The notes: a model not told the origin generated them from the letters alone. A stretch of 64,000 bases of DNA from IMGVR_UViG_3300036770_006296:62001-126000, one strand, 5' to 3'. Positions 20,150 through 60,981 are shown, counted from the first letter of the stretch. Program-made: numbers and translations.

Positions 20150-21100
20150 CACATCGCCTCGTTACCCCGAGGCAAGCACCTATAAACTTGCCCCGTTTTC
20201 GCCCCGTTCCTCACCAAATACTCCACTTCGCCCCGCAACCTCTAATTAAACTATCTTAAAGCGCGGAATAGAAAAATCCCCATTTAGTCCCCCGATTTTT
20301 CCACTAAAATGATCAGAAATTTCTACCCTAAAAATGGGGGGACTAAAACGATAAAAACCCCCAAACACGCCCCCGCTCTTATACATACTACTACTAGCTA
20401 TTACCACCTATTAACACCTACTACTAACTAGACATATACCTATACATATACAGTACAGCATACACATATACACTAGACACACTCCTACCCCTATAAATCA
20501 ACATACCTTAATTAAACTAATAAAAACAAAAAGAATCACTACATCTACTATAGTACATAGAGTACCCATATCTATATAGACACCTACCCCTACTGTATAC
20601 ACAACCCATACCCCTACTGTATATGAAAGGGGACGTATAGATGACCCCGCGCTCACACGTATACACGTACTTAATAGATAGAGACACAAGGGCATTTTTA
20701 TAGCGTCCCGTGCATCCAAAATACTCCATGATAACTACCCCTTTGACCTCCCGTGGAAAGGCCCGTAGAATATACCACAGAGTGAGCAAGGTTAAACCCA
20801 CTTTCTACGTGCGCCTCGGAAGGCCCCCAGGGGGACCCCACGCGGTCTCGAGCGGGCGATTATCTGGGATTTTCTGGGAATCTCCTGGAGATCTAGGATA
20901 CCTTCCCGGGGAACTCCCGAGGATTCCCTGGGATTCCCCTGGATATTCTTAGAAACTCTTGGAAACCCCTGGATGCGTGCGAGTGCGGGGGCGAATCCGG
21001 GTGATCCCGGGAGTCACGAAAAATATTTGGATAGGGGGATTTACTTTTTGATAAACTTTTTATATAATTGAAATATAAGAAAGGAGGGGAAAATTTAGGA
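20150..21100. other. non-coding divergence region, candidate origin or control locus
   Basis: No credible ORF; C-rich to G-rich switch; CCCCTACTGTATA x2; GGGG(A)CTAAAA units; CTGG(G)A array. Confidence 0.45.
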
Positions 21101-21160
21101 ATCGTTTTTTTCTTCCGAGGAGAACTGCTAAATTTGCAAAAAATAAAAACGTAAAAAGCG

Positions 21161-21532
21161 ATGATTATAAAAAGAAAAAAAGAAACTCCCCCGAACGATT
21201 CCCGTCTGTGGTCTAAAGGAGATCGTAAGACTTTGAAGGCTATGGTGAAGGAGGGTAAGACACTTAAGGATATCGCAGAGGAGCTTGGGCGAACCCCTGC
21301 TGCTGTGCAATATCAGAAGAGTGCGATGGGATTGGTTAAGAAGGACAAGAAGGTGAGGATGAAGACTAAGGAGGGTAAGAAGATTGAAGTTAATGTGTCT
21401 GCTGAGGTTCTCCCTGATAAGGAGATGACCCCTAGAGATAATGCCAAGGAGTTGGCGAGGGTTGCTCGTGGAATAGCCCGAGCAAATGGTAAAAGGATAA
21501 CGATGGCTATGTTCTTCGTTGAAGATTTGTAA
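21161..21532 (+). CDS. Myb/GcrA-like HTH DNA-binding protein
   Basis: WSKGDRKTLKAMVKEGKTLKDIAEELGRTPAAVQYQK. Confidence 0.7.
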   Translation: MIIKRKKETPPNDSRLWSKGDRKTLKAMVKEGKTLKDIAEELGRTPAAVQYQKSAMGLVKKDKKVRMKTKEGKKIEVNVSAEVLPDKEMTPRDNAKELARVARGIARANGKRITMAMFFVEDL

Positions 21533-21552
21533 ACAATTAAAATCAAATAAGT

Positions 21553-22197
21553 ATGGGAAAACAAATTCCAAAAAATGTAAAGGTGGCTGCTATGAAGGCA
21601 TATGTGGCCGATGGTAAAAACCTAAGGGATGCTGCGTCAGAGCACGGGGTTAATCCAGAGAGTCTACGTAAATGGTTAGGTAGCAAAGTGCGTAAGAGAG
21701 GTGCACATCTTAGAGGTAAGAGAATCACTATGTCTCCTGTGCCTACTCCAATTAATGCTCGTAAGCCTAGAACATCTAAGGCATCTCCGGAGAACAACCG
21801 TTCTAATAAGCGATGGAGCCGCACAGAGGATGAACTACTAAGAGACGCGGTTCTTAGCAAGATGACTGTTAAGGAGACTGTTGAATTGTTAGGAAGAACC
21901 TCCGTGGCTATCTACTGTCGTAAGAACTACCTAACCGATAATGGATTCATTAACGAGACGAGTAAGTTTGTTATGCCGACTGGCATCAAGAGAGTACGTA
22001 AGCAGATGGAGACTCCTTTCGATACTGCTGAGGTGGAAGCTATTGTGGATATCCCTGAGACTGAGCCATTACAAGAATCTAATGGAGCTTACCAGAACAT
22101 TGAGCTTTCCGATCTTGCTAAAGTTGTCCGAGACTATGGTGTTAACATCACCGTGTCTATGACACCACGAGGTATGGAAGTTAAAATGAGTAACTAG
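21553..22197 (+). CDS. two-HTH DNA-binding protein
   Basis: N-terminal LRDAASEHGVNPESLRKW HTH; second WSRTEDELL...VELLGRTSVAIYCRK. Confidence 0.7.
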   Translation: MGKQIPKNVKVAAMKAYVADGKNLRDAASEHGVNPESLRKWLGSKVRKRGAHLRGKRITMSPVPTPINARKPRTSKASPENNRSNKRWSRTEDELLRDAVLSKMTVKETVELLGRTSVAIYCRKNYLTDNGFINETSKFVMPTGIKRVRKQMETPFDTAEVEAIVDIPETEPLQESNGAYQNIELSDLAKVVRDYGVNITVSMTPRGMEVKMSN

Positions 22198-22306
22198 TCT
22201 CAAACCCCTCGAGATTAAAAAAGAAGGCCAGTCTTATGACTGGTCTTTTTTGTGGGAGGGCCCTTGATAGGACCCCTTGCGTGTGTGCGTGCGTATGTGG
22301 ATTTTT

Positions 22307-22759
22307 CTAATATTTATCCTCTTCCCCTAGGTGTAGGGTGATCTTCCAGAGTTTAGTGTCTTCTGAGTTGTTCATATAGATTTCTATTGAGGTGAGGGAT
22401 AGAGGAAATCTGTGTACTTCTGCGGTGAATGTGTCGTATTCAAAATCTGATTCTGTGAGTTCGATGGTGTCTTCTTCAGGATCTCCTGTGGCGGGATCGT
22501 CCATCTCAATAGTCATGGAGAGGGATTTTAGTTTTATTCCATTAGATCCTATGTCGATGCCCCAGTTTCTGTAATCCAGATCTATCGTCCATTCTGCGGT
22601 GCCGTCGATGACTCTTGCCATGTAGAGAGATTTGGGTTCGTCATAGAAGTCTATGGATGTGGGAGCGCCACTGCGGGAGTAGGTGGCTATTTTTGTGCGG
22701 TACACTAGGGTGTCCGATGCGGATTCCGAGATGTGTCCGAATGTTTTAATACGTTTCAT
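22307..22759 (-). CDS. acidic hypothetical protein with CTS
   Basis: MKRIKTFGHISES; GATAAATA at 22764-22771 on - strand. Confidence 0.8.
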   Translation of the reverse strand: MKRIKTFGHISESASDTLVYRTKIATYSRSGAPTSIDFYDEPKSLYMARVIDGTAEWTIDLDYRNWGIDIGSNGIKLKSLSMTIEMDDPATGDPEEDTIELTESDFEYDTFTAEVHRFPLSLTSIEIYMNNSEDTKLWKITLHLGEEDKY

Positions 22760-22817
22760 AAGATATTTATCCGTGAATTGTTTTTTTATTCCGAGAAGGA
22801 GCCGTATATTTGCAATG

Positions 22818-22900
22818 TAAAAACACTTCTTTGTTTTTCCATATTATTTAGGTTTATAATTGGTTATCATAAGACCGAGTCCACAAAGGCTCGGTTTTTT
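22818..22900 (+). ncRNA. candidate antisense-type small RNA
   Basis: TATATTTG at 22805-22812, ORF-less body complementary to leader+ATG, terminator 22873-22900. Confidence 0.5.
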
Positions 22901-22947
22901 GTTGTCCGTGAATTTGCGGACATCCCAGAATTTCTAAGAAAATCCCA

Positions 22948-23020
22948 GCGGCATCCCGAGCGGAACTCGAGCGGAATCCGAGCGGAAGGTCTGCGGCATC
23001 TCTGCGGAAGTCTCCGAGGA
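22948..23020. repeat. 11-bp-period GCGG(A/C)A array
   Basis: GCGG at 22948, 22960, 22971, 22982, 22993, 23004. Confidence 0.8.
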
Positions 23021-23144
23021 TTAATCCCCAGGGGAGCCACCGGGAAATATAATGCGAGGGAAATTTATCGGATCGGATTGGAATTTTTTGGAAATCATTT
23101 TTTTGATTGTAGAGAATTTTCTATCTTTGTAAGAAAAAGGGATT

Positions 23145-23675
23145 ATGAAAGACACTACCAAAGTTGCAGCATTAGCGGTCACAAGGAACATCGCAGACAA
23201 GCTTTACGAGGGTAACGACGTGAGCAAGCGTATGGGACGCATATTATCTATAACATCTGCCGTGCTGGAAAAGAGCGATGCTCGATTTGATAGAATGCGG
23301 GAAGAGTTACAGAGTGTATACGAGGAGATGTCCCGTGTACATAATAAATTGTATCAGGATTTGGGCGGGCAATTAGGTTCCGGTGAATTCTTCGGAGTGG
23401 ACATTGAGGATCTCGAAGGTAAGACGGATTTAAACTTTAAGCGGCTGGTTGAAGGAATCGATCCCGACGGATTTATGAGTCTTCAGCTTTCCCTTGGAGG
23501 ATTACGAGAGCTCATTGGTAAACTCTCGGCCGGTGTTCCCTTTAGAACCCCAGACTTGATTTTTGCCGAGAGACTACAGTTTGCTCATTGGTTGACGTTC
23601 ATGAGTGTGTACGAGAGTAAGCACCGAGATCGGGTTTTAAAAATAATCTCTAAGTACGATCCAAAAGCTTCTTAA
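23145..23675 (+). CDS. hypothetical protein
   Basis: EP upstream; stop abuts the next EP. Confidence 0.8.
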   Translation: MKDTTKVAALAVTRNIADKLYEGNDVSKRMGRILSITSAVLEKSDARFDRMREELQSVYEEMSRVHNKLYQDLGGQLGSGEFFGVDIEDLEGKTDLNFKRLVEGIDPDGFMSLQLSLGGLRELIGKLSAGVPFRTPDLIFAERLQFAHWLTFMSVYESKHRDRVLKIISKYDPKAS

Positions 23676-23726
23676 ATCATTTTTTTAATTAAATAGAATT
23701 TTCTACATTTGTAAAAACAATCAAAC

Positions 23727-24599
23727 ATGCCAAATCACATTTCTAACATTTTGACTATCGAAGGCGACTCCAAGAGGGTAGCACAGATTAAGAGCGATAT
23801 CATTTCCGTTGATGAGGAAGGGAATATCAGACACATTGATTTCAACAAGATCGTTCCGATGCCGGAGAGTTTGCATATCACGAGTGGCAGCAGTACGAGT
23901 AACGGGCTTGCTATCTTGAAATATCGTGCAGGTGATCCCACGGAGATTAATCAGATAATGGGATATCAATGGGCGACTGAGTTTGCGACCCCGGAGGATT
24001 TAATCAATCATATGCTCGAGAAGGGTACGGCTAATCTCGAAGAGGCTCAGAAGGCTTTGGATAACGAGAAGTTATACGGACACCTAGATTGGTATTCTTG
24101 GAGTATTGCTAATTGGGGTACTAAGTGGAACGCATATGACACCAACGAGAATGAAGACGACGGGATTTATTTCCAGACGGCTTGGAGTAATCCATATCCT
24201 GTCATGGAGGCTTTAAGCCGTAAGTATCCGGATGTTGTGTTTCATGTGAGATTTGCCGACGAGGATTTCGGTCACAATGTGGGCGAGTACAGTTTGGAAA
24301 ACGGAGAGGTTATCTCGGAGAACATTCCCGAGGGTGGTTCCGAGGAGGCTTATGATCTGGCCGCTGATATCACGGGATATGAAAGTTATCTCACTGACCG
24401 TGTGTATGATATCGAAGCAGAGACTATCGACGAGCTTGAGGATTACGAGAAGACTTATATCAAATCGGTTTACAACAAGGGTGTCATTGAAGACTTCCCG
24501 AGAGTTGTGATTGACTACATGTTGGAGTTAGCCGTTGCTGATGAGAACTTCGAGTTAGCTACTCAGCTAAGAGATATGATCGCTTGTAATGACGAGTAA
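23727..24599 (+). CDS. DUF1281/YubB ferredoxin-like domain protein
   Basis: MPNHISNILTI...IDFNKIVPMP...WYSWSIANWGTKWNAY...FQTAWSNP. Confidence 0.8.
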   Translation: MPNHISNILTIEGDSKRVAQIKSDIISVDEEGNIRHIDFNKIVPMPESLHITSGSSTSNGLAILKYRAGDPTEINQIMGYQWATEFATPEDLINHMLEKGTANLEEAQKALDNEKLYGHLDWYSWSIANWGTKWNAYDTNENEDDGIYFQTAWSNPYPVMEALSRKYPDVVFHVRFADEDFGHNVGEYSLENGEVISENIPEGGSEEAYDLAADITGYESYLTDRVYDIEAETIDELEDYEKTYIKSVYNKGVIEDFPRVVIDYMLELAVADENFELATQLRDMIACNDE

Positions 24600-24639
24600 T
24601 CATTTTTTTTAACAACAAACGTTTTCTATATTTAGGTGG

Positions 24640-25458
24640 ATGGACGATAAATCTAAGATAGTTAGAATGCGAGATATAAGCTTCGATCCCTCCTTATTCG
24701 AAACAATGAGGACGGGAAAGAAGATTGATAACTTGCTAAGCTCTGAAGGTGGATTTACAAGATCCACCAATTTTATTTTGGTGGGTGACCCAGGAATTGG
24801 TAAGAGTACGGTTTCGATGGATATCTTAGCGGATTTAAAGCGGAATGGTTATTCTGTTCTTTTTATCTCTGGTGAGATGGACCGCGTGGATTTATACCGC
24901 TATGTTAAACGATATCCTAAGTTTGCCGATCTCGACATTCTTTTCCTCGGTGAGTACATAGACGAAAATCCGATGAGAGTTATAGAGAGTACACTCGACC
25001 TAGGATACGATGTGGTGCTGATAGATTCATTCATCGAAGTTTGTGACACGGTCAAGGAAGGATGTAAGATCACTTCGAATGCTGCGGAAAAATGGCTGAT
25101 TGATTTAATGCGTAAGAACAATGCGGGTGGCAATTCTAAATCCGCTTACACCTCGTTCCTTTGTATTCAACAGGTTACTAAGGAAGGTGTGTTCGTCGGT
25201 TCGAATAAACTTAAACATAATACGACCGGTATGATGGAGCTTCGATTTACACCAGACGGATCCCGTTTTATTATGTTTACTAAGAACCGAAGAGGCGAGG
25301 TCAACAAGAAATTATACTTCGACCTTTCTTCCACTTCGGATGTAAACTATGAATACGAGACATTTAATATTTCCATAGAGAAAGCCGCAAAACACGTGAC
25401 GTCACGTAAGGATGACGAGGACGAAGAGAACACCACTAGTATATTTTTCGGGATGTAA
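24640..25458 (+). CDS. RadA/Sms-like RecA-family ATPase, ATPase domain only
   Basis: GDPGIGKST Walker A, LFISGEM, VVLIDS, QVTKEG..VGS..LKH, KNRRG. Confidence 0.8.
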   Translation: MDDKSKIVRMRDISFDPSLFETMRTGKKIDNLLSSEGGFTRSTNFILVGDPGIGKSTVSMDILADLKRNGYSVLFISGEMDRVDLYRYVKRYPKFADLDILFLGEYIDENPMRVIESTLDLGYDVVLIDSFIEVCDTVKEGCKITSNAAEKWLIDLMRKNNAGGNSKSAYTSFLCIQQVTKEGVFVGSNKLKHNTTGMMELRFTPDGSRFIMFTKNRRGEVNKKLYFDLSSTSDVNYEYETFNISIEKAAKHVTSRKDDEDEENTTSIFFGM

Positions 25459-25586
25459 TTCCTGCTTTTTTGCATCCCGAGGCCCAAGAGCGATCTTGGG
25501 TTTTTTTGTGGAATCATTTTTTATATTAGAAAATTCTATCTACATTTGAATTAGAAACAAACAACAAACAAACGACTATAATTGAT

Positions 25587-25841
25587 ATGGCAAAAAGAAA
25601 GATATCAAGAAAGAAGTTAGAGGAAAGGTTATCAAGGGGTGAGGTTAATTTCTCTTATGAGAAAATCGATGGTACTACACGTAAGGCTAGAGGTACCACT
25701 AATGTTGATTTGATACCTGAGGAGTGGAGACCTACTGGAGGTTCATTAGCGCATGATGGCACTGCGTATTTTGATTTGGATATCCAGGAGTGGCGTTCAA
25801 TTTCGTCGGTTGTTTCTAAGGTTAATCTTTTGGGACTATAA
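25587..25841 (+). CDS. DUF2693/WYL_2 SH3-like protein
   Basis: VNFSYEKIDGTTRKARGT...YFDLDIQEWRS. Confidence 0.75.
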   Translation: MAKRKISRKKLEERLSRGEVNFSYEKIDGTTRKARGTTNVDLIPEEWRPTGGSLAHDGTAYFDLDIQEWRSISSVVSKVNLLGL

Positions 25842-25851
25842 ATCAAATAAT

Positions 25852-26268
25852 ATGACTAATCGGAAAATTAAACTTAAGTTTTGGAAAATGGTCAGGTGGA
25901 TGGACAGAAAAATGATAAAGCCCACGCCTCTAACCGACACACAGCAAATGGGTGTTAAAATATTTGAAAGAACTGTGTCGATTAAGGATGCTGAAATCTT
26001 TTTCTCCCCCTTGAGCGACTCAATCTATATAGAGGTCGACGACATTTATATTATACTAGAGGGTAGCGATCTTCAAATCATCAACGGGAAATTCAGATAC
26101 GATTTACACTATCCAGATTCGGTTAGATCTAAGCTCGTAAGGAAAGTGCTTAACACGCTGGAGCAAAGAAGAATAGAAGTTGAAAGAAGAATAAAAGCTA
26201 AAAGCGATCGCACACTTAATTCCATAATGGAAGAAATCGAAGATATTCGAAAAGAAAAGGGACAATAG
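25852..26268 (+). CDS. hypothetical protein (start corrected)
   Basis: ATG after A-rich leader. Confidence 0.75.
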   Translation: MTNRKIKLKFWKMVRWMDRKMIKPTPLTDTQQMGVKIFERTVSIKDAEIFFSPLSDSIYIEVDDIYIILEGSDLQIINGKFRYDLHYPDSVRSKLVRKVLNTLEQRRIEVERRIKAKSDRTLNSIMEEIEDIRKEKGQ

Positions 26269-26459
26269 TTTGTTTTGTTTGTTCATAGAAAAGGACCGGG
26301 GTTTTTACTTCGGTCTTTTTTTGTGGTCTGCTGTGTGGTTGCACTGCACATCTCCTGAGGAACCCCCGGAAGGATGCTAAAAAGTTTTCTTGGAAAATCA
26401 TTTTTTTCTTTATATAGATTTTTCTACATTTATTAGGTAACCAAATAAAAAATTATGTC

Positions 26460-27269
26460 ATGAAATTATTTGATGAACGCCAGGTGAAGATGATGAAATA
26501 TCTTTCCTCTGGACTTCCACCACAGAGTAGATGGCGGTACAATCCGGTAACAGACCTTATAGATATAGAGGGGGATTTCAATTGTGGATGGACGGGTTTT
26601 AAAGATTTTAGAGGAGTTAAATTTGGAAAGATCACTGGACATTTCGATTGTTCCGGTATAGGACTCACCAGTTTAATAGGAGCTCCTGAAGAGGTCGGAA
26701 AAGATTTCAATTGTTCGAAAAACAATTTAACTAGTCTTGAAGGTGCACCTAAAAAGGTTGGTTATAGTTTCAATTGTTCAAAAAACTCTCTAGAAAGCCT
26801 AGAAGGAGGTCCTGAATATGTTAGGGGAAATTATGATTGTTCGAGTAATAAGCTCGTTACTCTTAAAGGATCCCCTAAAGCTTTACGCAGGGGGAGTAAA
26901 TTTATTTGCTCCAATAATCTTTTAAAAGATTTAAACGGGTTAATAGATAATGATTTTATGGGATTTTTTACATGTAAACGCAATCCCCTTACTAGTCTGG
27001 AAGGAGCACCAATCAACATAGAACCTTATTGGGATGGAAGTTATGAAGGAAAAATTTCATATTATGGAAATAAAGGTGTTTCGGGAAAGGTGCTCGAATT
27101 AATTCATCTCACGATGATTGAAAAGAAAGTGCCATTTATTATCGCTCTAGGTATTCTTAAGAACGAGATAAAATCGAGCGATCTTAAGAAGCTACTTCCT
27201 TCGGATCAGGAGAACGTAGAAGATGTACTAAAAGGAGCTAGCATGTTAGCTAAATTTGAATCTTTCTAA
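26460..27269 (+). CDS. LRR-21 family protein with KG-tag
   Basis: FNCSKNNLTSLEGAPKKVG repeats; ends KGASMLAKFESF. Confidence 0.88.
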   Translation: MKLFDERQVKMMKYLSSGLPPQSRWRYNPVTDLIDIEGDFNCGWTGFKDFRGVKFGKITGHFDCSGIGLTSLIGAPEEVGKDFNCSKNNLTSLEGAPKKVGYSFNCSKNSLESLEGGPEYVRGNYDCSSNKLVTLKGSPKALRRGSKFICSNNLLKDLNGLIDNDFMGFFTCKRNPLTSLEGAPINIEPYWDGSYEGKISYYGNKGVSGKVLELIHLTMIEKKVPFIIALGILKNEIKSSDLKKLLPSDQENVEDVLKGASMLAKFESF

Positions 27270-27331
27270 GAATCATTTTTTTATTTAGGTAGATTTTTCT
27301 ATATTTATGATAACCAATTAAACTTCCAGTT

Positions 27332-27559
27332 ATGGAAATGAACTTCATTAAAGTTATAGACGAGAGAACAAGAGACACAGTAGGATTTGCTGTTGTTGAG
27401 AAAGGCTCTCTGGAAGAGTCAATGATAGTTGACCGCTTCATAGACGAGGGAATGATTTTTGTAGCCTCGAATGAAGAGGAATTTAGTAATTTTGATGGAG
27501 ACTTCGTGAAGAGGTTTGGTAATGGAATGTTTTGTACTCACGCACCAATGGCAGATTAA
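27332..27559 (+). CDS. hypothetical protein
   Basis: EP and leader. Confidence 0.7.
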   Translation: MEMNFIKVIDERTRDTVGFAVVEKGSLEESMIVDRFIDEGMIFVASNEEEFSNFDGDFVKRFGNGMFCTHAPMAD

Positions 27560-27560
27560 T

Positions 27561-27833: not shown

Positions 27834-27873
27834 ATCATTTTTTTCTTTAGATAGAATTTTCTACATTTACAAT

Positions 27874-28164: not shown

Positions 28165-28165
28165 T

Positions 28166-28489: not shown

Positions 28490-28499
28490 ATTAAAAAAT

Positions 28500-52851: not shown

Positions 52852-52874
52852 AATTAGGAATCATTTTTTTTAAG

Positions 52875-53490: not shown

Positions 53491-53662
53491 GTTCTTCAAT
53501 AAAATTCAATATACTTTCCTCACCATCAATTGTTTTAACCGAGTCATCTAGATAAATAACAACAATTCTTGGCGGTAAATCGTTCTCCATAAATGATTGA
53601 ATTTTTTCTATTCCTTTAGCATCTAATATTGTTTCATCAATATCTTTTAAATAATCTTTCAT
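53477..53662 (-). CDS. hypothetical protein in inverted cassette
   Basis: Own TATATTTG promoter (~53711-53718, - strand) and A-rich leader. Confidence 0.7.
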   Translation of the reverse strand: MKDYLKDIDETILDAKGIEKIQSFMENDLPPRIVVIYLDDSVKTIDGEESILNFIEELKQK

Positions 53663-53931
53663 AATTTTCTTTTTTAATTGTTAAACAAAAATAATACATA
53701 CTTATAACAACAAATATAAGAAATAAATCTTACTTTGTCTATTTTTTAATGAAAAGATTTACTTCTCATATTTGCAACCGATAAAACTTTTTTATTCCCT
53801 TCTGGGTTTAAAAATAATGATACGCATGGGAGAAGACAGTATTTTAAAATTATCTAAAATCCCAAGGAATCATTTTTTTCTTTAGATAGAATTTTCTACA
53901 TTTGTATCGTAACCACTAAAAAATAAAAAAA

Positions 53932-54297
53932 ATGGATAATCAAGAAGAAGAAAACATAAGGAAGGGCAAAAGTATGCTAGTAAAATTTGGGGTGATTGAT
54001 CCCAGATTAGATAGAGCTGTTAGGAAATATTATAATGGAAGAAGATCAAACGATTCAGCTTTTGATGATATTTTTGAATTCTATTACGATAAAGGAGACC
54101 TTTCAGCCGCGGGTATAACTATAGCGGAGTACGATGAATTAGATTGGAATCCTAGCGTCAGTGTACGAGCGCAGGTTGTAAACTGTGCAGAGCTTGATGA
54201 TGAATTATTTGATTATCTAAGAGGTATTGTAGATCCTGATTGGTACGATGATGACGATGATGACGATGATGACGATGATGACGATGACGGATGGTAG
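53932..54297 (+). CDS. acidic protein, N-terminal KG-tag, poly-Asp tail
   Basis: IRKGKSMLVKFGVI...YDDDDDDDDDDDDDGW. Confidence 0.85.
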   Translation: MDNQEEENIRKGKSMLVKFGVIDPRLDRAVRKYYNGRRSNDSAFDDIFEFYYDKGDLSAAGITIAEYDELDWNPSVSVRAQVVNCAELDDELFDYLRGIVDPDWYDDDDDDDDDDDDDDGW

Positions 54298-54383
54298 AAA
54301 AAGAATTAAAAAGATTTGGAATCATTTTTATTATTGTAGAAGAATCCATATATTAGCTAAGTAAATCAATTAAACAAAATCAA

Positions 54384-54560
54384 ATGGAAAAACTAGCAGC
54401 AAAAATTAATCTAATTGTTGTAGCACTACTCGTTTTATCAGCAGCAGCGATCTTCTTCATCTCAGTGGTAAGAGGAGATTTAATAATTGGTATCATCGGA
54501 GGAGCATTAACTTGGATAGGAATACAAATCTTAAAAATCACAATCAATGAATCAGCGTAA
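54384..54560 (+). CDS. 58-aa two-TM peptide, not in track
   Basis: MEKLAAKINLIVVALLVL...; EP upstream. Confidence 0.65.
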   Translation: MEKLAAKINLIVVALLVLSAAAIFFISVVRGDLIIGIIGGALTWIGIQILKITINESA

Positions 54561-54768
54561 ACCAAACAAAACACTAGGAGACCTATACGTTGAGGTTGTC
54601 CTGGTAATAGGGATACCCTTAGGAATAGTAGCACTACTCAACTGGCTGACCCTATAATATAACGGGGTCCCCACCCGGAGGCCGCGTGCCTACGTGCGTA
54701 CGTGAGGAATAAATCAGAAAAAAACGGAATCATTTTTTTAACCAGAGCATTTTAGATACATTTACCTC

Positions 54769-55056
54769 ATGAACACTTACAAATTTAGAGCAGAATGCCT
54801 TCACGATGTGATACAATTCATGAGTCATGCTCCAGAGGTAATACAACAGATAGATGTACAAAAGGATGAAAGGTTTCCTGATTGCTATGTCACTCTTAAA
54901 ACCACCTCAGAGATGTCAGAAGTACTAAATAAAATACTTGAAATGCAAGGAGACGTTCACGTTATGTTTGAGAGTCTTCAACCAGAAGGGGAATACACAG
55001 GAGAAAGAATAAGAAGCTTTCATTCATCATCAAAAGACAACTTCATGGAGAAGTAA
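54769..55056 (+). CDS. hypothetical protein
   Basis: EP upstream. Confidence 0.75.
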   Translation: MNTYKFRAECLHDVIQFMSHAPEVIQQIDVQKDERFPDCYVTLKTTSEMSEVLNKILEMQGDVHVMFESLQPEGEYTGERIRSFHSSSKDNFMEK

Positions 55057-55294
55057 AAAAGACTATTCTGTGATTAGTTTAGTTTGATTAACACCCAAGA
55101 TAGGGATTCGGCTTCGGCTCGGATCCCTTTTTTGCGAGCCGAGGTTTTTTGACCTGGCCTGGATTAATCTCTGGGGAACCCCAGGAATCCTGATCCAGCA
55201 GATGTAAGAGAAGTGTAAACTTTTTTCAGAAATCATTTTTATTCCTGTAGAAAATTCTATATATTTGTATTGTTAATCAATCAAACAAAAATAA

Positions 55295-55444
55295 ATGAAA
55301 GCAGAAACAAAAAAGAAATTAGAATTCTTAATGGAATTAGGTTTAACCCAAAATGAAATTAATGAACTTCTAGATAATCAATCTATTCTTGATGAATCAA
55401 AAGAATTCAAAAAAGAAGAAGTTGAAGAAGATGAAGATTACTAA
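55295..55444 (+). CDS. 49-aa acidic peptide, not in track
   Basis: MKAETKKKLEFLMELG...EEDEDY; EP upstream, terminator downstream. Confidence 0.7.
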   Translation: MKAETKKKLEFLMELGLTQNEINELLDNQSILDESKEFKKEEVEEDEDY

Positions 55445-55656
55445 GGGGTTAGTAATAAAAAAGGGAAGGAGACTTAGGTCTCCTTTTTTTGTGGGGAAAA
55501 TCTAGACCAGCTAGATGCTCCTGCGGTGCCCCAGGAATCCTGATCCAAACCCCAATAAATTTTTTTTAGAAAATTCCACTTTTTTCCAAGAATCATTTTT
55601 TATATTAGAATATTCTACATATATTTGTATAGTTAATCAATTAAACAATATCAATT

Positions 55657-55968
55657 ATGAAAAAGGAAATGACAGCAGAACAAAAAGCAAAAAAGGCGGC
55701 AGCTAACAAGGCGTACAGAGAGCGCAAAAAAATGCAATCTCAAAACTGGATGGAACTCGACAAGTTCGAAATGAGTTTCGAGCATAAAGTTCGACTTTTC
55801 AAAAACCTCAAATTGGAAATCACAAATTCCTATTGCGCATCTCCGGGGACAGTTTTGAAATTTGAAAAACTCACTAATAACGATAACACAATCGTTTATC
55901 GGGTTCGCCGCACAGGTCGAAGAACTTTCTTCACCACCTCCGTCCACCTTCACGCTCCCGCTGAATAG
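55657..55968 (+). CDS. basic protein family member 2
   Basis: Near-identical to 51704..52006. Confidence 0.85.
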   Translation: MKKEMTAEQKAKKAAANKAYRERKKMQSQNWMELDKFEMSFEHKVRLFKNLKLEITNSYCASPGTVLKFEKLTNNDNTIVYRVRRTGRRTFFTTSVHLHAPAE

Positions 55969-56093
55969 CCGGGACTCACCATAGAAAGGAGCTTAGGCTC
56001 CTTTTTTTGTGCCCAAAGGTTTCTGGATGTAGGCTGAGATAAACTCCTGGGGCTCCTCAGGAAATTTTCACATCTTCCTTATCTATAAGATTT

Positions 56094-56198
56094 ATGGAAG
56101 AGATAGATAAAATAAAAAGATGGGGTTGTATAGGAATAGTATTCATTACTATCCTATGGACTTCACTTATCTACTGGGCATTGTCCAAAGCATTCTGA
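56094..56198 (+). CDS. 34-aa TM peptide, not in track
   Basis: MEEIDKIKRWGCIGIVFITILWTSLIYWALSKAF between two palindromes. Confidence 0.45.
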   Translation: MEEIDKIKRWGCIGIVFITILWTSLIYWALSKAF

Positions 56199-56304
56199 GG
56201 ATCCTCCGAGAATCCCAGCTGGCCCAGAAATAATAATCAGGAATCATTTTTTTATTTGTGGAAAAATCTATATATTAGCTTGTTAATCAATTAAACAAAA
56301 GCCA

Positions 56305-56460
56305 ATGTATTCTTTAGATTGTGATTATTACACAAAACAATTCCCATCCATCGATGATCTCATATCGGATATTATATCATCTGGCATGGACCCAAATTAT
56401 GTAATAACCTATAATGGTGTACCCATAGGTTATCAAGCTATTGAGCTAATTCAATTTTAA
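56305..56460 (+). CDS. 51-aa protein, not in track
   Basis: MYSLDCDYY...QAIELIQF; paralog of next ORF. Confidence 0.75.
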   Translation: MYSLDCDYYTKQFPSIDDLISDIISSGMDPNYVITYNGVPIGYQAIELIQF

Positions 56461-56517
56461 GAAATCATTTTTTTCTTCAAATAGATTTTTCTACATTTAC
56501 ATTATAAAACAAATTTT

Positions 56518-56757
56518 ATGTATTCATTAGACTGTGATTACTACAAAAAAGAATTCTCAACCCTTGATGAACTCTTGGACGATATTATACTATCTGGTAT
56601 GGACCCAAATTATTTAATAACATACAATGGGGCCACCTTCAACTACCAAGCTATTGAACTAATAACTGGACGTATGAGCCAGCATTTCCCGAATGTTAAC
56701 ATTACCAAAGAACTCATGATGACATTTTGCAGTTGGGTAAAGTCCCGGAAGAATTAA
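56518..56757 (+). CDS. paralog of 56305 with new C-terminus from an insertion
   Basis: 17-bp direct repeat at 56647-56663 and 56759-56775. Confidence 0.75.
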   Translation: MYSLDCDYYKKEFSTLDELLDDIILSGMDPNYLITYNGATFNYQAIELITGRMSQHFPNVNITKELMMTFCSWVKSRKN

Positions 56758-56845
56758 TCAAGCTATTGAACTAATTCAATTTTAAGAAATCATTTTTTTC
56801 TTCAAATAGATTTTTCTACATTTACATTATAAAACAAAGACCTAC

Positions 56846-57076
56846 ATGTTAATTTACACAATAATTTTTACCCTAGCTCTCTTGGTCCTAATAGCTACAA
56901 AAACGACAGGGATTGACCAACCCACACTAGATTATAAAGAGAGCTATGCAGCGGAGGTGAGTAATGCCAGCTACTTTACTCTGCCTCGAGGACAGCCCAG
57001 TAGATTGTGGGCTTCTATCATAACAAATAAATCACCGCCCCGTAACAAGGGTAAGCCCGGATATAATACAAGTTAA
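56846..57076 (+). CDS. small signal-peptide/TM protein
   Basis: Hydrophobic N-term; EP upstream. Confidence 0.6.
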   Translation: MLIYTIIFTLALLVLIATKTTGIDQPTLDYKESYAAEVSNASYFTLPRGQPSRLWASIITNKSPPRNKGKPGYNTS

Positions 57077-57204
57077 AGAAAGACCCTTATTACAGGGTCT
57101 TTTTTGTGGACTATTGTTTACAATAAACCTCCTATTGTAAACCACTGGGGCTCCGCAGGAAAATCAAGAAGAAGATAAGATATATATAGTATAAAAAACA
57201 AATT

Positions 57205-57645
57205 ATGAAACATATTAGGCTTTACGAATACTATTCTGAATTACCAACTTCATTCAGTGTAGCAGAGATCCAAAACATGTCGGAGACGGACTTTTTAACA
57301 AACCTTAAAATGTTAAAAGATAAGGGAGACGAAGAGCAGGCTTTTTCGTTATTACAAATTTGGATGAATCACCATAAAGATGCGGCGAACGACATGGATT
57401 TCAATGCGAAACTCGGAGGTATATTTCGTGACGTTTCTCTTGAATCAGATGACAGCCCTAAGTCTGGCAATTTCCTTCATGATAAAGCAGTGCAATTGAA
57501 CACTTATCTTGCTAAGAACAAACGTGAAGGCGTGGTAAAACAAATAGAAGAGGTAAAAAGAAATATAAAAAATTACGAAGAAATGCTTAGAGTGGCTAAA
57601 GATAGATTAGATAGATTAGAATTTGAAATGACAAAAACTATGTAA
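57205..57645 (+). CDS. CTS-bearing coiled-coil protein
   Basis: MKHIRLYEYYSE; LP at 57179. Confidence 0.8.
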   Translation: MKHIRLYEYYSELPTSFSVAEIQNMSETDFLTNLKMLKDKGDEEQAFSLLQIWMNHHKDAANDMDFNAKLGGIFRDVSLESDDSPKSGNFLHDKAVQLNTYLAKNKREGVVKQIEEVKRNIKNYEEMLRVAKDRLDRLEFEMTKTM

Positions 57646-57871
57646 TTTGAATTCATATAATAATAAGAAAGACTCTTAGGAGTCTTTTTTTGTGATCTAA
57701 ACCACTGGGGCTCCGCAGGAAATCCAATGGTAGATGTGATTTATACTCTCATGCCCCCTCCGGGGGGACGCGTGCGTACGTATGCACGCGTAGGCACTTT
57801 TTTCAGGAATCGTTTTTTTATCTGTAGAAAATTCCATACATTAGCTATGTTAATCAATTAAATAAATACAA

Positions 57872-58006
57872 ATGGAAAAGGCAGTAAATGTTTTAGCAGC
57901 AATTTGGGTAGGTGTTTTAATGTCAATGACAATCATCTCATTAGGCTATGCAATAGTTCAAGTTGTAACCGGCAATGTACATTCCACAGCAAGTTTTGAA
58001 TTTTAA
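57872..58006 (+). CDS. 44-aa TM peptide, not in track
   Basis: ...WVGVL...QVVTGNVHSTASFEF; paralog of 59097. Confidence 0.7.
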   Translation: MEKAVNVLAAIWVGVLMSMTIISLGYAIVQVVTGNVHSTASFEF

Positions 58007-58171
58007 ATGAAAACAACAATCACAAAAGAAGCCCTAAGAAAAGCCAGAATGGGCTCAGTAAGAGAAGACCAGAAAGCACAAGGTTTCTTTGATGGTAGAT
58101 TTGTAACAAGATGTGAGGAAGACAAAAAGAAATACACAAGAAAAGAGAAACACAAATCTAAATCCTACTAA
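58007..58171 (+). CDS. 54-aa basic peptide, ArfA-like C-terminal pattern
   Basis: GFFDGRFVTRCEEDKKKYTRKEKHK. Confidence 0.6.
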   Translation: MKTTITKEALRKARMGSVREDQKAQGFFDGRFVTRCEEDKKKYTRKEKHKSKSY

Positions 58172-58435
58172 ACAAAAACAAAATCTTTTAAACCCTAGGT
58201 TCGGCCTAGGGTTTTTTTGTGGGCTAAAAATCCCAAGCTATGGTAAATCCTCCGAGGCACCCCAGGAACTTTTCCATAGATTTATTTTTTATATTTCTCT
58301 ATTTCTCCCATGCGGCACCCCAGAGTAACCCTATAAATTTTTTTTAGAAATTTCCACTTTTTTCCAAGAATCATTTTTTAGTTTGTAGAAAAGTCTATAT
58401 ATTAGCTAAGTTAATCAATTAAACAAAAACAAATT

Positions 58436-58753
58436 ATGAAAAACACAGAAAAAAAACCAGTTGCTAAAAAAGCTACAAAAACCACTAAAGTTTCTAACAC
58501 CCCTGATTGGATGACTTTGGACAAGTTCGAAATGAGTTTCACCCACAAAGTTAGATTATTTAGAAATCTAAAATTGGAAACCACAAACTCCTACTGTGCA
58601 AGCCCAGGGACTTCCCTAAAGTTTGAAAAAATCAAAAATGAAGATAATACAATTGTCTTCCGGGTTCGCCGCAATGGCCGCCGCACCTTCTTCACCACCA
58701 ACGCGGAACTCCAGGCGCCAGCTGAAATCCCCGCTGAAATCCCCGCTGAATAA
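58436..58753 (+). CDS. basic protein family member 3
   Basis: DWMTLDKFEMSF...CASPGTSLKFE...RTFFTT. Confidence 0.85.
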   Translation: MKNTEKKPVAKKATKTTKVSNTPDWMTLDKFEMSFTHKVRLFRNLKLETTNSYCASPGTSLKFEKIKNEDNTIVFRVRRNGRRTFFTTNAELQAPAEIPAEIPAE

Positions 58754-58896
58754 CCGGGGTTTCACAAAACTTCAAAAGACCCTTCGGGGTCTTTTTTTGT
58801 GACCAAATTTTAGGACAGATCCTAATCCTCCTGAGGCACCCCTGGAACTTTACCATATATTCAGTTTTTATATTTAAAAAAAATTCTTATATTTGT

Positions 58897-58958
58897 AGTT
58901 CATAAAATATTTATTCTTTGGAGTAAGCCAGGAACCCTAGATTTATCTAGGGTTTCTT
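58897..58958 (+). ncRNA. candidate small RNA, copy 1
   Basis: TATATTTG 58888-58895, ORF-less body, terminator 58930-58958. Confidence 0.5.
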
Positions 58959-59096
58959 GTGTGTAAAGAAATCTAGATCTATGGTAAATCTCCTGCGGAA
59001 CCCCAGGAAAAGAATCCAAAAAGATTCAAGAAATCGTTTTTATCTTTGTAGAAAAATCCATATATTTATATAGTTAATCAATTAAACAAAATAAAA

Positions 59097-59228
59097 ATGA
59101 AAACAGCAAATGTAATTGGAATGGCTTGGGTAGGAATTTTAATAGCAACAGTTATAGTTGCTTTAGGTTTCACAGTTTATCAAGTATGCACGGGGAACTA
59201 CCACGGCACAGCAAGTTTTGAGTTTTAA
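59097..59228 (+). CDS. 43-aa TM peptide, not in track
   Basis: ...WVGIL...QVCTGNYHGTASFEF. Confidence 0.7.
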   Translation: MKTANVIGMAWVGILIATVIVALGFTVYQVCTGNYHGTASFEF

Positions 59229-59270
59229 TTAAAGTTTTGAATTTCAATTAAAAAAAATTCTTATATTTGT

Positions 59271-59332
59271 AGTTCATAAAATATTTATTCTTTGGGATAA
59301 ACAAGAAACCCTAGATTCATCTAGGGTTTTCT
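59271..59332 (+). ncRNA. candidate small RNA, copy 2
   Basis: TATATTTG 59262-59269; near-identical body; terminator 59303-59332. Confidence 0.5.
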
Positions 59333-59470
59333 GTGTGTAAAGAAATCTAAATCTATGGTAAAACTCCTGCGGCGCCTCAGGGATGAAGAATCAAAAAAGA
59401 TTCAAGAATCATTTTTATCTTCGTAGAAAAATCCATATATTTATAATGTTAATCAATTAAAATCTATCAC

Positions 59471-59542
59471 ATGAAAAAACCACTTGTAATCTTCATCACA
59501 CCAAATGGATTAATGGTTATAGAAGATATCATAGCTAACTAA
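59471..59542 (+). CDS. 23-aa peptide
   Basis: MKKPLVIFITPNGLMVIEDIIAN between EP and terminator. Confidence 0.45.
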   Translation: MKKPLVIFITPNGLMVIEDIIAN

Positions 59543-59662
59543 CACAACCACACATCAGAAATCAAAAGGGAGGATTGTATCTTCCCTTTTTTTGTTTAAC
59601 AATTTTTAAGAATCTATTAGACAACCGAGGAGGCACCCCACGAATATATAATAGACCAATGT

Positions 59663-60046
59663 ATGGTTAAAGTGCCAGTGAGTATAGGAGAACTAATTGA
59701 TAAGTTATCAATCCTCCAAGTTAAAAAGACAAAAGTCAAATCACAAGAGAAATTATCATTTATAGAGAAAGAGTATAATCTCTTATATGAGATGAGTTGT
59801 GATTATCTAAAAAACAATGACATTCAAAACACATTTAATGAATTAATAGCAATCAATCTTGCTCTTTGGGAAATAGAAGATTCACTAAGAGTAATAGAAA
59901 GCACAAAACAATTTGATGCCCATTTCATTGAATTAGCAAGAAGTGTTTACTACACCAATGATGAGAGATTTAGACTCAAAGATAAAATCAACTCTCTTAC
60001 ACATTCAGAAATCAAAGAACAAAAAGATTACCAAGGCTATCTATAA
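59663..60046 (+). CDS. DUF6165 family protein
   Basis: VPVSIGELIDKLSILQVK...LWEIED...ARSVYYTNDERF..K..IN. Confidence 0.8.
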   Translation: MVKVPVSIGELIDKLSILQVKKTKVKSQEKLSFIEKEYNLLYEMSCDYLKNNDIQNTFNELIAINLALWEIEDSLRVIESTKQFDAHFIELARSVYYTNDERFRLKDKINSLTHSEIKEQKDYQGYL

Positions 60047-60176
60047 ATTCCCTGCGGAGCCTCAGGGACTCTTCATTAATTTGCAAATGCCTAAGAAAAT
60101 AATAGATAGAATCTTCTCTGGAATCATTTTTTTATTTGGAGTATAATGAATATATTTACTCTATAACACACAACAC

Positions 60177-60806
60177 ATGATAGCAACAATAATAGTTATA
60201 ATAAACATAGTACTTCTAGAAGTCATCCTAAGTATAGATAATGCAGCAGTGATGGCAACCATGGTTAAAAAGCTTCCACAATCCCAACAAAAGAAAGCCC
60301 TCACCTATGGTATCTTAGGAGCATACCTCTTCAGAGGACTTGCACTCCTCTTTGCATCCCTACTCCTCTCCATAGCATGGCTGAAAATAGTCGGAGGCGC
60401 ATATCTGTTCTATATAGGTGTCAAAAGCCTCTCCCCTAAAACACCAGAAGGAGAAATTAAATCATCTCCCTCATTCTGGACCACAGTACTATCAATAGAA
60501 GTAATGGACCTTGTCTTTAGTATAGATAATGTCTTAGCTGCAGTAAGCTTCACCAAAAATCTCAACCTCATTATAGCAGGAGTATTCATAGGCATCCTTG
60601 GTATCAGATTTGCCACCACTAAATTCATCAACATCATCAATCAAAACCCACAGATAGAAAAAATAGCATACATAGTTATATCAGCACTAGGACTAAAACT
60701 CATCCTCTCCTATTTCTTACCATCCCTAAACACTGAATCAGTAGACCTAGCCTTCTCTATCCTCACTCTAGCAGCATTTACCATCCCACTAATCAAAAAG
60801 AGATAA
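60177..60806 (+). CDS. TerC family membrane protein
   Basis: LEVILSIDNA...ALTYGILGAYLFR...DLVFSIDNVLAA. Confidence 0.9.
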   Translation: MIATIIVIINIVLLEVILSIDNAAVMATMVKKLPQSQQKKALTYGILGAYLFRGLALLFASLLLSIAWLKIVGGAYLFYIGVKSLSPKTPEGEIKSSPSFWTTVLSIEVMDLVFSIDNVLAAVSFTKNLNLIIAGVFIGILGIRFATTKFINIINQNPQIEKIAYIVISALGLKLILSYFLPSLNTESVDLAFSILTLAAFTIPLIKKR

Positions 60807-60981
60807 AATAACACCTCTATTATACAAGGGCCTTTTAGGCCCTTTTTTGTGACCCCACTTTTTGCCAACTCTTATCACTTCTTTCTCTGGGGCTCCTCAG
60901 AGGGCTAAAGCTACCCAAGCAAGATTAAGCTCCCTGAGGCACCCTAGCGAAACCCCTCATCAACCCAAATATTAACCCCAC

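What the first reader, a model, noticed from the sequence alone, without database searches (positions are those of the whole stretch)
21100..60850. 40-kb early block built from precisely abutting promoter+ORF cassettes
Seen: about 50 near-identical EPs. Many stop codons touch or overlap the next AATCATTTTTT (23675, 24599, 27833, 28724, 33867, 39889, 40688, 45372, 48260, 56460). Units end terminator-TTTTTTGTG-palindrome-EP. Paralogs are scattered, and one EP is fused to an ORF without its -7 element (52859). Established: PeSL promoter/stem-loop cassettes mediate gene shuffling and minicircles in T4-type phages RB49 and phi1. Inference: an analogous but sequence-distinct shuffling platform in a Bacteroidota phage, with no integrase in view.
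Basis: partly seen in the sequence, partly recalled or inferred. Interest (0 to 1): 0.68.

Follow-up and report, generated by a model that had tools for sequence, protein, structure and literature searches.

The report
Shuffling promoter-gene cassettes in lake phage
A 40-kb stretch of an uncultured freshwater jumbo phage consists of about 54 near-identical promoter-plus-gene units, and comparison with related phages shows that whole units are gained, lost, swapped and moved, mostly at the promoter repeats, as in the known PeSL cassettes of T4-type phages but in an unrelated phage with Bacteroidota-type signals.

Summary
Window 21100-60132 holds 54 same-strand copies of AATCATTTTTT. In 52 of them a TAnATT(T/A)(G/A) box, the Bacteroidota sigma-A -7 type, follows exactly 29 nt later. 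Thirteen stop codons lie within 2 nt of the next head. About 15 units end hairpin-T-run-GTG-palindrome-EP. Six paralog families are scattered. EP 52859 is a head without a -7 box.

Between G000 and the 248-kb relative G001, gene adjacency breaks in 12 of 21 steps inside the block against 4 of 77 in two core regions. Against 80 metagenome loci, 55% of 207 homology ends fall in an EP (12.7% expected). Of 63 structural differences, 50 have at least one junction in an EP. A 95-97% identical strain lacks one EP-to-EP cassette and carries an EP-plus-LRR-gene cassette inserted exactly at another EP head.

No integrase or resolvase is in the 206-kb contig. A RadA/RecA-fold ATPase gene sits in the block.

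Not tested: early timing, minicircles, and whether EP homology causes the exchanges. EP-less gene boundaries also break, less often.

Verdict: a PeSL-like platform in a non-T4 lineage, a new variant of a known kind.

The parts
20100..21099 (.). About 1 kb of non-coding DNA between the minus-strand gene array and the EP block. It holds an array of CC(N)GGRAWT half-sites at about 20860-21010, related to the palindrome half-site. It lies at the minimum of cumulative GC skew. It may be an origin or a regulatory hub; this is inference.
21100..60132 (+). Array of 54 EP units. Each has the head AATCATTTTTT, an 18-nt spacer holding TAGAA-NN-TTCTA, the -7 box TAyATT(T/A)(G/A), and then either ATG at +41 or an 11-26 nt A-rich leader (often GTAACCAATTAAA). 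Each unit drives 1-4 mostly ORFan genes.
21161..22197 (+). Two paralogous helix-turn-helix proteins (21161-21532 and 21553-22197; transposase-type HTH hits, no catalytic domain seen). They are driven by the first EP (21100), the only one with CCGAGGAGAACTGC in place of the TAGAA repeat. They are candidate regulators; this is inference.
24640..25458 (+). RadA/RecA-fold ATPase of 272 aa, a candidate phage recombinase. It is expressed from EP 24598 (ATG at +42).
30292..35440 (+). MoxR-type AAA ATPase (30292-31314), vWA protein 1 (31434-32984), family-A LRR cassette (EP 33097, gene 33151-33867) and vWA protein 2 (EP 33868, gene 33932-35440). The order of these cassettes differs in G001, L090 and L107.
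33097..33867 (+). An EP-to-EP cassette (EP 33097 plus a family-A gene whose stop touches EP 33868). It is absent from strains L107 and L090. In L107 the junction is one shared EP, with a 45-nt overlap.
35558..35568 (+). EP head used as an insertion slot. In L107, an EP of the 39889 type plus a family-A gene ending in TAG sits immediately in front of this head.
39230..40698 (+). Two adjacent family-A cassettes (39293-39889 and 39930-40688). They encode 21-residue cysteine-ladder LRR proteins. Each stop overlaps the next head. The second is a leaderless type. L054 has an unrelated ORF in their place.
26460..27269 (+). Family-A paralog. It is absent in L089.
44512..45372 (+). Family-A paralog without its own EP. 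Its start overlaps the stop of 44183-44512 and its stop overlaps head 45372. It is absent in L113 and L057. This is a breakpoint at an EP-less boundary.
33040..33096 (+). Example of the post-terminator element: the palindrome CTGGGGAACCCCAGGA at 33068-33083 plus its spacer, directly before an EP head. There are 27 such sites in the window. Sequence changes break the predicted pairs, so it reads as a DNA site, not an RNA hairpin.
49322..49983 (+). The cargo of cassette EP 49250. In L059 (flanks 92% and 98% identical) and L056 it is replaced by an ORF with no tblastx similarity anywhere in G000.
50075..50920 (+). Phage RpoD-like sigma factor (regions 1.2, 2, 3 and 4), expressed from EP 50009.
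52859..52869 (+). Half EP: the head without spacer repeat or -7 box, running into frame 52875-53051. It is comparable to the 'degraded (1/2) PeSLs' of Comeau et al. 2014.
53464..53779 (-). A 316-bp reverse-oriented moron (61-aa ORF 53477-53662 with its own TAtaTTTG box). It is absent from contigs of four runs from four studies. This is an indel that is not at an EP.
60177..60850 (+). The last cassette, a TerC-family membrane protein (60177-60806), plus the terminator at 60826-60844. This is the right end of the block.

Best explanation
The block is the hyperplastic early (host-takeover) region of an uncultured freshwater jumbo phage of about 250 kb whose expression signals are of the Bacteroidota type.

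Each EP is a strong host sigma-A-type promoter. It consists of a T-run -33 element inside the AATCATTTTTT head, an invariant spacer, and a TAnnTT(T/A)G -7 box. The predicted start is 41 nt after the head. That makes nine cassettes leaderless and gives the rest an 11-26 nt A-rich leader without a Shine-Dalgarno sequence. The inverted repeat TAGAA-NN-TTCTA in the spacer is most simply an operator for a dimeric regulator that shuts off or tunes the early genes.

The 45-65 nt EP-plus-leader is repeated about 54 times in one orientation. It therefore also serves as portable homology. Recombination, or template switching, between EP copies deletes, duplicates, replaces and relocates units of the form [EP head ... 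stop codon]. In the clearest cases the crossover lies in the first 16-18 nt of the head. The likely agent is a RecA-family or annealing-type recombinase, phage or host; a RadA-like ATPase gene lies in the block.

SHOWN: the repeat architecture; scrambling of gene order confined to this block; clustering of junctions at EPs; cassette-exact presence and absence in near-identical strains.

INFERRED: promoter activity and early timing, the operator role, the recombination enzyme, and any circular intermediate.
For: ARCHITECTURE AND STATISTICS..

PROMOTER TYPE. The sigma-A -7 box TAnnTTTG occupies -12 to -5 in Flavobacterium (PMC9723704), which places the start at head+41, the A of ATG in nine cassettes. 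E. coli-type promoters are not enriched, 46 against 66.8. Only 9% of ORFs have an SD-like motif (PMC6847099). A phage RpoD-like sigma is present and no RNAP beta-like gene was found.

SHUFFLING. RBH synteny between G000 and G001 gives 12 of 21 adjacency breaks in the block against 3 of 51 and 1 of 26 in the cores, p = 4e-7. Of 207 homology ends, 55% fall in the zone -10 to +80 of a head, against 12.7% at random. Of 63 unique structural events, 24 have both junctions in an EP (1.1% expected), 26 have one and 13 have none. Junction overlaps of 34-45 nt equal one shared EP.

INDIVIDUAL CASES. L107, at 95-97% identity, lacks cassette 33142-33867 and carries an EP+LRR cassette at head 35558. L112 has an EP-to-EP deletion of 47195-48260, and L090 has swapped the vWA2 and LRR cassettes. 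In L059 and L054 the cargo is replaced by unrelated ORFs. G001 against G002 gives six indels, each with one edge at an EP head.

EP AGAINST EP-LESS BOUNDARIES. EP-bearing gene boundaries break in 69% of traversals against 32% for EP-less ones.

OTHER SUPPORT. EP and leader variants are lineage-specific: GTAACC against GTAAACC, AATCC heads only in G001/G002, and the palindrome variant only in G000. There is a RadA/RecA-fold gene and no integrase or resolvase. The array is specific to this clade, because 15 other phage contigs with MoxR homologues lack it.
Against: No transcript data exist, so 'promoter' and 'early' rest on sequence alone.

Breakpoints also occur at gene boundaries without an EP (44512; 48661/48908; 28490). 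One indel lies inside or behind a gene with no EP (53464-53779). So EPs are not the only junctions, and selection for intact genes contributes.

BLAST segments necessarily extend through any EP because all EPs are alike. Junction positions inside the EP are therefore ambiguous, and 'at the EP' is partly built in wherever a gene has its own EP.

Loci from one population are not independent (L093, L101 and L071 share events).

The shared stretch at the best-resolved crossovers is only 16-18 nt, which is short for RecA-type exchange.

No circular molecule was seen.
Confidence: 0.68

Rival explanations
1. Passive-boundary model. EPs are only promoters. Rearrangements arise by illegitimate recombination anywhere, and selection keeps those that leave whole genes with a promoter, so junctions appear at EPs without EP homology playing any part.
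For: EP-less gene boundaries are also junctions, in 32% of traversals. Examples are 44512, 48661/48908 and 28490. The reverse moron 53464-53779 is unrelated to any EP. Stop-to-head abutment can be explained by genome compaction alone.
Against: EP boundaries break twice as often as EP-less ones (69% against 32%). Junctions repeatedly show one EP shared by both flanks, with a 34-45 nt overlap. The same kind of cassette sits at different EP slots in 95-97% identical strains. Relatives carry tandem EP-bounded arrays of family A (L093 and L101). EP variants are lineage-specific.
Confidence: 0.2
2. Dedicated site-specific system (integron-like). The EP head or the CTGGGGAACCCCAGGA palindrome is a recombination site cut and joined by a phage-encoded enzyme. 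Candidates would be the transposase-type HTH proteins at the head of the block, or an unrecognised recombinase.
For: The palindrome is strongly over-represented, lies at unit ends, and behaves as a DNA site. Related half-sites form an array at 20860-21010. A contig from run X12 has about 456 extra nt flanked by two copies of 55159-55195. Two HTH proteins with transposase-type HTH hits head the block.
Against: There is no tyrosine or serine recombinase in 206 kb, with controls positive. The HTH proteins show no catalytic domain. Crossover positions vary (head, +35, +60, leader), which does not fit one cut site. G001 and G002 lack the exact palindrome yet show the same kind of EP-bounded indels.
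Confidence: 0.07
3. Apparent replacements are only fast divergence of orthologous ORFs between conserved promoters, not exchange.
For: Many loci are only 70-85% identical, and there HSP ends at EPs could reflect faster decay of coding or intergenic sequence.
Against: In L059 the flanks are 92% and 98% identical, while the 552-nt insert has no tblastx hit anywhere in G000. Deletions, insertions and relocations (L107, L112, L114, L070) cannot be produced by divergence.
Confidence: 0.05

Closest known systems
PeSL (promoter-early stem-loop) cassettes of T4-type phages RB49/phi1, PST/T4 and nt-1/KVP40 (Arbiol et al. 2010, PMC2839356; Comeau et al. 2014, PMC4122927)
   Same: Both are about 50 copies of a conserved host-sigma early promoter. 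Both are often preceded by a terminator stem-loop, sit upstream of ORFans in a hyperplastic region, and have indels, replacements and displacements between relatives at or near the repeats. Both include degraded half elements. Neither has a dedicated recombinase.
   Different: The phage lineage is unrelated: no cultured relative, no T4 gp23 or gp20 hit, and about 29% identity to T4-type topoisomerases. The promoter is of the Bacteroidota -33/-7 type, with no Shine-Dalgarno sequence and some leaderless units. All copies lie in one 39-kb unidirectional array, not spread over several regions. Only about 15 of the 54 have the stem-loop, and about 13 abut the previous stop codon directly. There is an extra inverted repeat in the spacer and an extra palindrome behind the terminators. 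Minicircles were not tested.
Morons of lambdoid and HK97-like phages (promoter + gene + terminator inserted between genes). This comparison rests on my own knowledge.
   Same: Both are autonomous promoter-gene(-terminator) units that are present or absent between otherwise identical neighbours.
   Different: Morons have unrelated promoters and unrelated junctions. Here all units share one promoter, which is itself the junction. The reverse unit 53464-53779 is a classical moron inside this block.
Integron cassette arrays. This comparison rests on my own knowledge.
   Same: Both are one-directional arrays of single-gene cassettes with a repeated boundary element and high turnover between strains.
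   Different: Integron cassettes are promoterless, end in attC, and are moved by IntI. Here each cassette carries its own promoter, no integrase is present, and crossover points are not fixed.
Bacteroidota sigma-A promoters (-7 TAnnTTTG; PMC9723704, PMC6847099)
   Same: The -7 box sequence matches. There is a T-rich element about 19 nt upstream. The leaders are A-rich and lack an SD sequence.
   Different: The conserved part is far longer (AATCA before the T-run, and a palindrome in the spacer). Half of the boxes end in TTAG or TTTA where the consensus has TTTG.

Membership tests
PeSL-type mobile regulatory cassettes | A conserved strong promoter of the host primary-sigma type, repeated tens of times | tested here: met
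   There are 54 copies. The head-to-box spacing is invariant in 52 of 54. The -7 box fits the Bacteroidota sigma-A consensus. Activity was not measured.
PeSL-type mobile regulatory cassettes | A stem-loop (terminator) directly upstream of the promoter, as part of the composite element | tested here: inconclusive
   This holds for about 15 of the 54, which have a hairpin, a T-run and GTG 60-190 nt upstream. About 13 others abut a stop codon with no stem-loop.
PeSL-type mobile regulatory cassettes | Located in hyperplastic regions, mostly upstream of ORFans | tested here: met
   Most of the 37 block proteins scanned have no family. Only 22 block genes have a reciprocal best hit in G001.
PeSL-type mobile regulatory cassettes | Insertions, deletions, replacements and displacements between relatives lie at or next to the elements | tested here: met
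PeSL-type mobile regulatory cassettes | Minicircles formed by recombination between neighbouring elements | not testable with these tools
   Only assembled contigs were available. Most of the 'goes back' joints that could be traced to a source are explained by paralogs elsewhere in the genome. No small circular contig was found.
PeSL-type mobile regulatory cassettes | Host phage belongs to the T4-type myoviruses (the group in which PeSLs were described) | tested here: not met
   There is no Gp23 or Portal_T4 match, although the controls were silent. The best cultured-phage hit of the topoisomerase is 29-30% identity. There is no nucleotide match in 50,697 phage records.
Bacteroidota sigma-A promoter | -7 box TAnnTTTG | tested here: met
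   53 of 54 have TAnnTT. 13 end in TTTG, 23 in TTAG and 17 in TTTA.
Bacteroidota sigma-A promoter | Transcription start 5-7 nt after the box, shown by 5'-end mapping | not testable with these tools
   The predicted start at head+41 coincides with ATG in 9 cassettes. There are no RNA data.
Integron | Tyrosine integrase next to the array | tested here: not met
   PF00589 and PF00239 give no match in the 206-kb contig, with controls positive. The contig is 81% complete.
Integron | Promoterless cassettes ending in a folded attC site | tested here: not met
   Each cassette starts with its own promoter. The palindrome shows no compensatory changes.

The most novel reading that the evidence does not exclude
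The array may be more than passive homology. It may be a programmed cassette-exchange platform. In that reading the EP head and the CTGGGGAACCCCAGGA palindrome, whose half-sites also form an array in the 1-kb non-coding region in front of the block, are bound by block-encoded proteins: the transposase-type HTH pair and the RadA-like ATPase. These proteins would target recombination to unit boundaries and so diversify a pool of early host-takeover genes, notably the variable-copy cysteine-ladder LRR family, across lake populations. That would be a promoter-carrying, integrase-free counterpart of an integron.
Probability: 0.1. Interest if true: 0.85.

Novelty: new variant of a known kind. Interest (0 to 1): 0.6.

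Why it matters
PeSL-mediated shuffling has so far been described, in the literature I could search, only for T4-type phages of Proteobacteria. It rests there on a few phage pairs and on inverse PCR.

Here the same logic appears independently. The phage lineage is unrelated and uncultured, the promoter grammar is different, and the layout is much denser and cleaner (54 units, one strand, 39 kb).

The phage is abundant in lakes: 20 runs from 10 studies and more than 80 metagenome contigs. Natural populations therefore already hold dozens of cassette-level variants. That makes the rate, direction and crossover sites of promoter-mediated gene shuffling measurable from metagenomes.

It also supplies a ready set of strong, compact Bacteroidota-type promoter and leader modules, leaderless ones included, and candidate operator sites.

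Tried and rejected
1. Nucleotide search of cultured phages found no match. A protein search found only distant T4-type topoisomerases.

2. Rfam and tRNA scans of the window found nothing.

3. The T4 capsid and portal families gave no hit, but the controls were silent, so this is weak. The T7-type RNAP search was likewise silent.

4. Inferring the host from TerC failed. The best cellular homologues are at most 45% identical and are spread over many phyla.

5. Laying contigs of four runs on 53001-59000: the contigs are short and end at EPs, an assembly effect of the repeats. Several EP-to-EP and 'goes back' joints match paralogous cassettes outside the laid stretch: the letters between the sides match the 51576-51704 region and EP 29401. 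The remaining ones rest on 21-39 nt of generic EP sequence. I do not count any of them as evidence for circles or rearrangement.

6. No metagenome locus had terminal direct repeats.

7. The palindrome as an RNA hairpin: the 5 predicted pairs show no compensatory change, and variation breaks the pairs. Rejected in favour of a DNA site.

8. EP arrays around MoxR homologues in 15 more distant phage contigs: none found.

9. G004 is 99.97% identical over 14.5 kb and so carries no information.

10. Structure prediction, the large protein searches and complex prediction were not used, because the claim does not rest on them.

Full report
WHAT THE WINDOW IS

The window is bases 62001-126000 of a 206,617-bp IMG/VR virus record, estimated 81% complete. 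It has no nucleotide match among 50,697 cultured-phage records. Its topoisomerase II large subunit is at most 30% identical to those of T4-type phages. Elsewhere the contig encodes helicases, ribonucleotide reductase, thymidylate synthase and tail-fibre proteins. So it is an uncultured jumbo phage of about 250 kb.

Sampled words of window 50001-60000 occur in 20 public runs of 10 studies, nearly all lake or freshwater metagenomes.

CHECK OF THE OBSERVATION

The motif AATCATTTTTT, allowing one mismatch, occurs 65 times against 9.9 +/- 3.3 in shuffles. Fifty-four copies lie on the + strand between 21100 and 60132.

Aligned on the downstream box, 52 of 54 have exactly 29 nt from the first base of the head to TA[c/t]ATT[T/A][G/A].

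The spacer holds the inverted repeat TAGAA-NN-TTCTA in one of two registers (48 matches against 7.6 expected). Extra copies lie 14-25 nt upstream of six heads.

The first ATG is 41-42 nt after the head in nine units and 52-67 nt after it in nearly all others. The longer leaders often contain GTAACCAATTAAA.

Thirteen preceding stop codons lie within -2 to +2 nt of the next head.

About fifteen heads are instead preceded by four elements in order: a gene-specific G+C-rich hairpin; T5-8 followed by (C)GTG; about 35 variable nt; and CTGGGGAACCCCAGGA. The palindrome gives 27 matches against 0.23 expected. Terminator-like sites are enriched, 30 against 13.2.

Six paralog families are scattered in the block. 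EP 52859 is a head with no box.

WHAT THE EP IS

The box fits the sigma-A -7 consensus TAnnTTTG of Bacteroidota. In Flavobacterium psychrophilum that box occupies -12 to -5 (PMC9723704). This puts the start at head+41, which is the A of the ATG in the nine short-offset units. Those units are therefore predicted to be leaderless. This is an inference.

- E. coli-type promoters are not enriched.
- Only 9% of ORFs of at least 150 aa have an SD-like 4-mer, and their upstream regions are A-rich and G-poor. The phylum lacks Shine-Dalgarno sequences (PMC6847099).
- The phage encodes an RpoD-like sigma inside the block. No RNAP beta-like gene was detected.

I therefore read the EPs as promoters for host RNA polymerase. 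The host phylum and the early timing are inferred. TerC homologues gave no host signal.

CARGO

The block encodes two HTH proteins, an Api92-like protein, a RadA/RecA-fold ATPase, a MoxR AAA ATPase, two vWA proteins, the sigma factor and TerC.

Family A has five copies. Each has a variable number of 21-residue repeats with a conserved Cys, similar to the LRR region of internalin J, and a conserved C-terminal domain ending in GHFD.

Most of the other proteins scanned have no family.

THE DECISIVE COMPARISON

Whole genomes. Reciprocal best hits between G000 and the 248-kb relative G001 are collinear over about 50 genes on one side and about 27 on the other. Inside the block 12 of 21 adjacencies are broken, against 4 of 77 in those cores (Fisher p = 4e-7).

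Homology ends. Against the metagenome loci, homologous segments start within 10 nt of a head in 39 of 102 cases and end 11-80 nt after a head in 54 of 105. Together, 55% of 207 ends lie in the zone -10 to +80, against 12.7% at random.

Structural events. Of 63 unique structural differences, 24 have both junctions in an EP (1.1% expected), 26 have one and 13 have none. Overlaps of 34-45 nt between the two flanking alignments show that one EP in the relative corresponds to two in G000.

Clean cases.
- L107 (95-97% identical) has a single EP where G000 has EP 33097, the family-A gene and EP 33868. It also carries an EP of the 39889 type plus a family-A gene ending in TAG directly in front of head 35558. 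The crossover can be placed only within the first 16-18 nt of the head.
- L112 lacks 47195-48260, from EP to EP.
- L090 has the vWA2 and family-A cassettes in the opposite order.
- L070 and L057 have the 53254 gene between copies of EP 48260.
- L059 has flanks 92% and 98% identical, and L054 has flanks 88% identical. Both carry ORFs with no similarity anywhere in G000 in place of the resident cargo.
- G001 against G002 (80% identity) shows six indels, each with one edge at a head.

The array is specific to this clade. Fifteen other phage contigs with MoxR homologues have no such repeats.

LIMITS

- Where nearly every gene has its own EP, any whole-gene indel will lie next to an EP. I therefore compared gene boundaries. 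EP-bearing boundaries break in 69% of traversals and EP-less ones in 32%. That is an enrichment, but not exclusivity.
- EP-less junctions exist at 44512, 48661/48908 and 28490.
- A 316-bp reverse-oriented promoter-plus-ORF unit at 53464-53779 is absent from contigs of four studies and has nothing to do with an EP.
- Loci from one population are not independent.
- BLAST extends through any EP, so the crossover inside the EP is mostly unresolved.
- The laid contigs could not show circles or rare variants. Most of their EP-to-EP joints that could be traced are paralogs from outside the laid stretch.

MECHANISM

No tyrosine or serine recombinase is present, with controls positive. Crossover positions vary. 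EP and leader variants are lineage-specific. Together these favour homology-driven exchange (recombination, annealing or template switching) between EP copies over a site-specific system.

ORF 24640-25458 has a RecA/RadA fold. It matches RadA at E = 2e-8 and RecA at E = 6e-4 in PDB sequences, and TIGR00416 at E = 2e-9, far below the equivalog cut-off. It is a candidate enzyme; that is an inference.

The palindrome behind the terminators shows no compensatory change. Related half-sites form an array at 20860-21010, in a 1-kb non-coding region at the GC-skew minimum. It is probably a protein-binding DNA site of unknown role.

COMPARISON WITH WHAT IS KNOWN

PeSLs of T4-type phages are composite terminator and early-promoter elements. 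There are 51-52 per genome, mostly in hyperplastic regions upstream of ORFans. They lie at indels between close relatives and can form minicircles (PMC2839356; PMC4122927).

This block works like that. It meets four of the six features I listed. It does not meet the lineage criterion, and only part of the units have the stem-loop. Minicircles could not be tested.

It differs in four ways: the promoter grammar, the leaderless units, the single dense unidirectional array, and the two extra palindromes.

I rate it a new variant of a known kind, with interest 0.6.

Noticed in passing
window 15253-19444, minus strand: A tandem array of 9-10 paralogous genes of 115-231 aa (30-75% identical). Each start overlaps the previous stop by 4 nt, and there are no EPs between them. 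The array is also present and variable in G001, G002 and G003. It is a contrast case of paralog expansion without promoter repeats.
   Followed up: partly
window 20100-21099: A 1-kb non-coding region at the minimum of cumulative GC skew. It has a C-rich part with short repeats (ctacccctactgtata) and an array of CC(N)GGRAWT sites at 20860-21010. It may be a replication origin or a regulatory hub.
   Followed up: partly
window 53464-53779: A reverse-oriented unit of 316 bp (own -7-type box plus a 61-aa ORF). It is present in G000 and G004 but skipped by contigs of four runs from four studies. It alters the 3' end of ORF 53254-53490.
   Followed up: yes
window 22278, 37413, 43615, 54683; similar at about 51080 and about 57760: A second G+C-rich intergenic repeat family, GGGGnCCyCnCCnGGnGGC followed by CACGCGTATACGTGCGTA-like sequence. 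Its function is unknown.
   Followed up: no
G000 contig 127900-141000 (outside the window, just after it): A second region where gene order against G001 is scrambled (5 of 7 adjacencies broken). Two EP-type heads lie at its start (127879 and 128282).
   Followed up: no
G000 contig 57239-71043 (window 1-9043 in part) against G001 137678-150973: One large inversion between the two phages. Gene order is otherwise conserved within it.
   Followed up: no
window 55159-55195: A contig of run X12 has about 456 extra nt flanked by two copies of this 37-nt stretch, which contains the palindrome. This suggests that the palindrome can also bound an inserted unit.
   Followed up: no
window 61089-61099, minus strand: An EP of subtype 2 points towards the end of the block from the other side (convergent). 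EP-type promoters with other spacers also occur on both strands elsewhere in the genome.
   Followed up: no
window 54250-54297: ORF 53932-54297 ends in a run of GAT/GAC codons (poly-Asp). Contigs appear cut there in the reads tool (54243-54293).
   Followed up: no
window 28490-28723 and 27560-27832: These are short stretches between a stop and the next EP head. The first is absent from strain L114. In L089 the deletion ends at the start of the second. They behave as small EP-less cassettes whose own start codons I did not resolve.
   Followed up: partly
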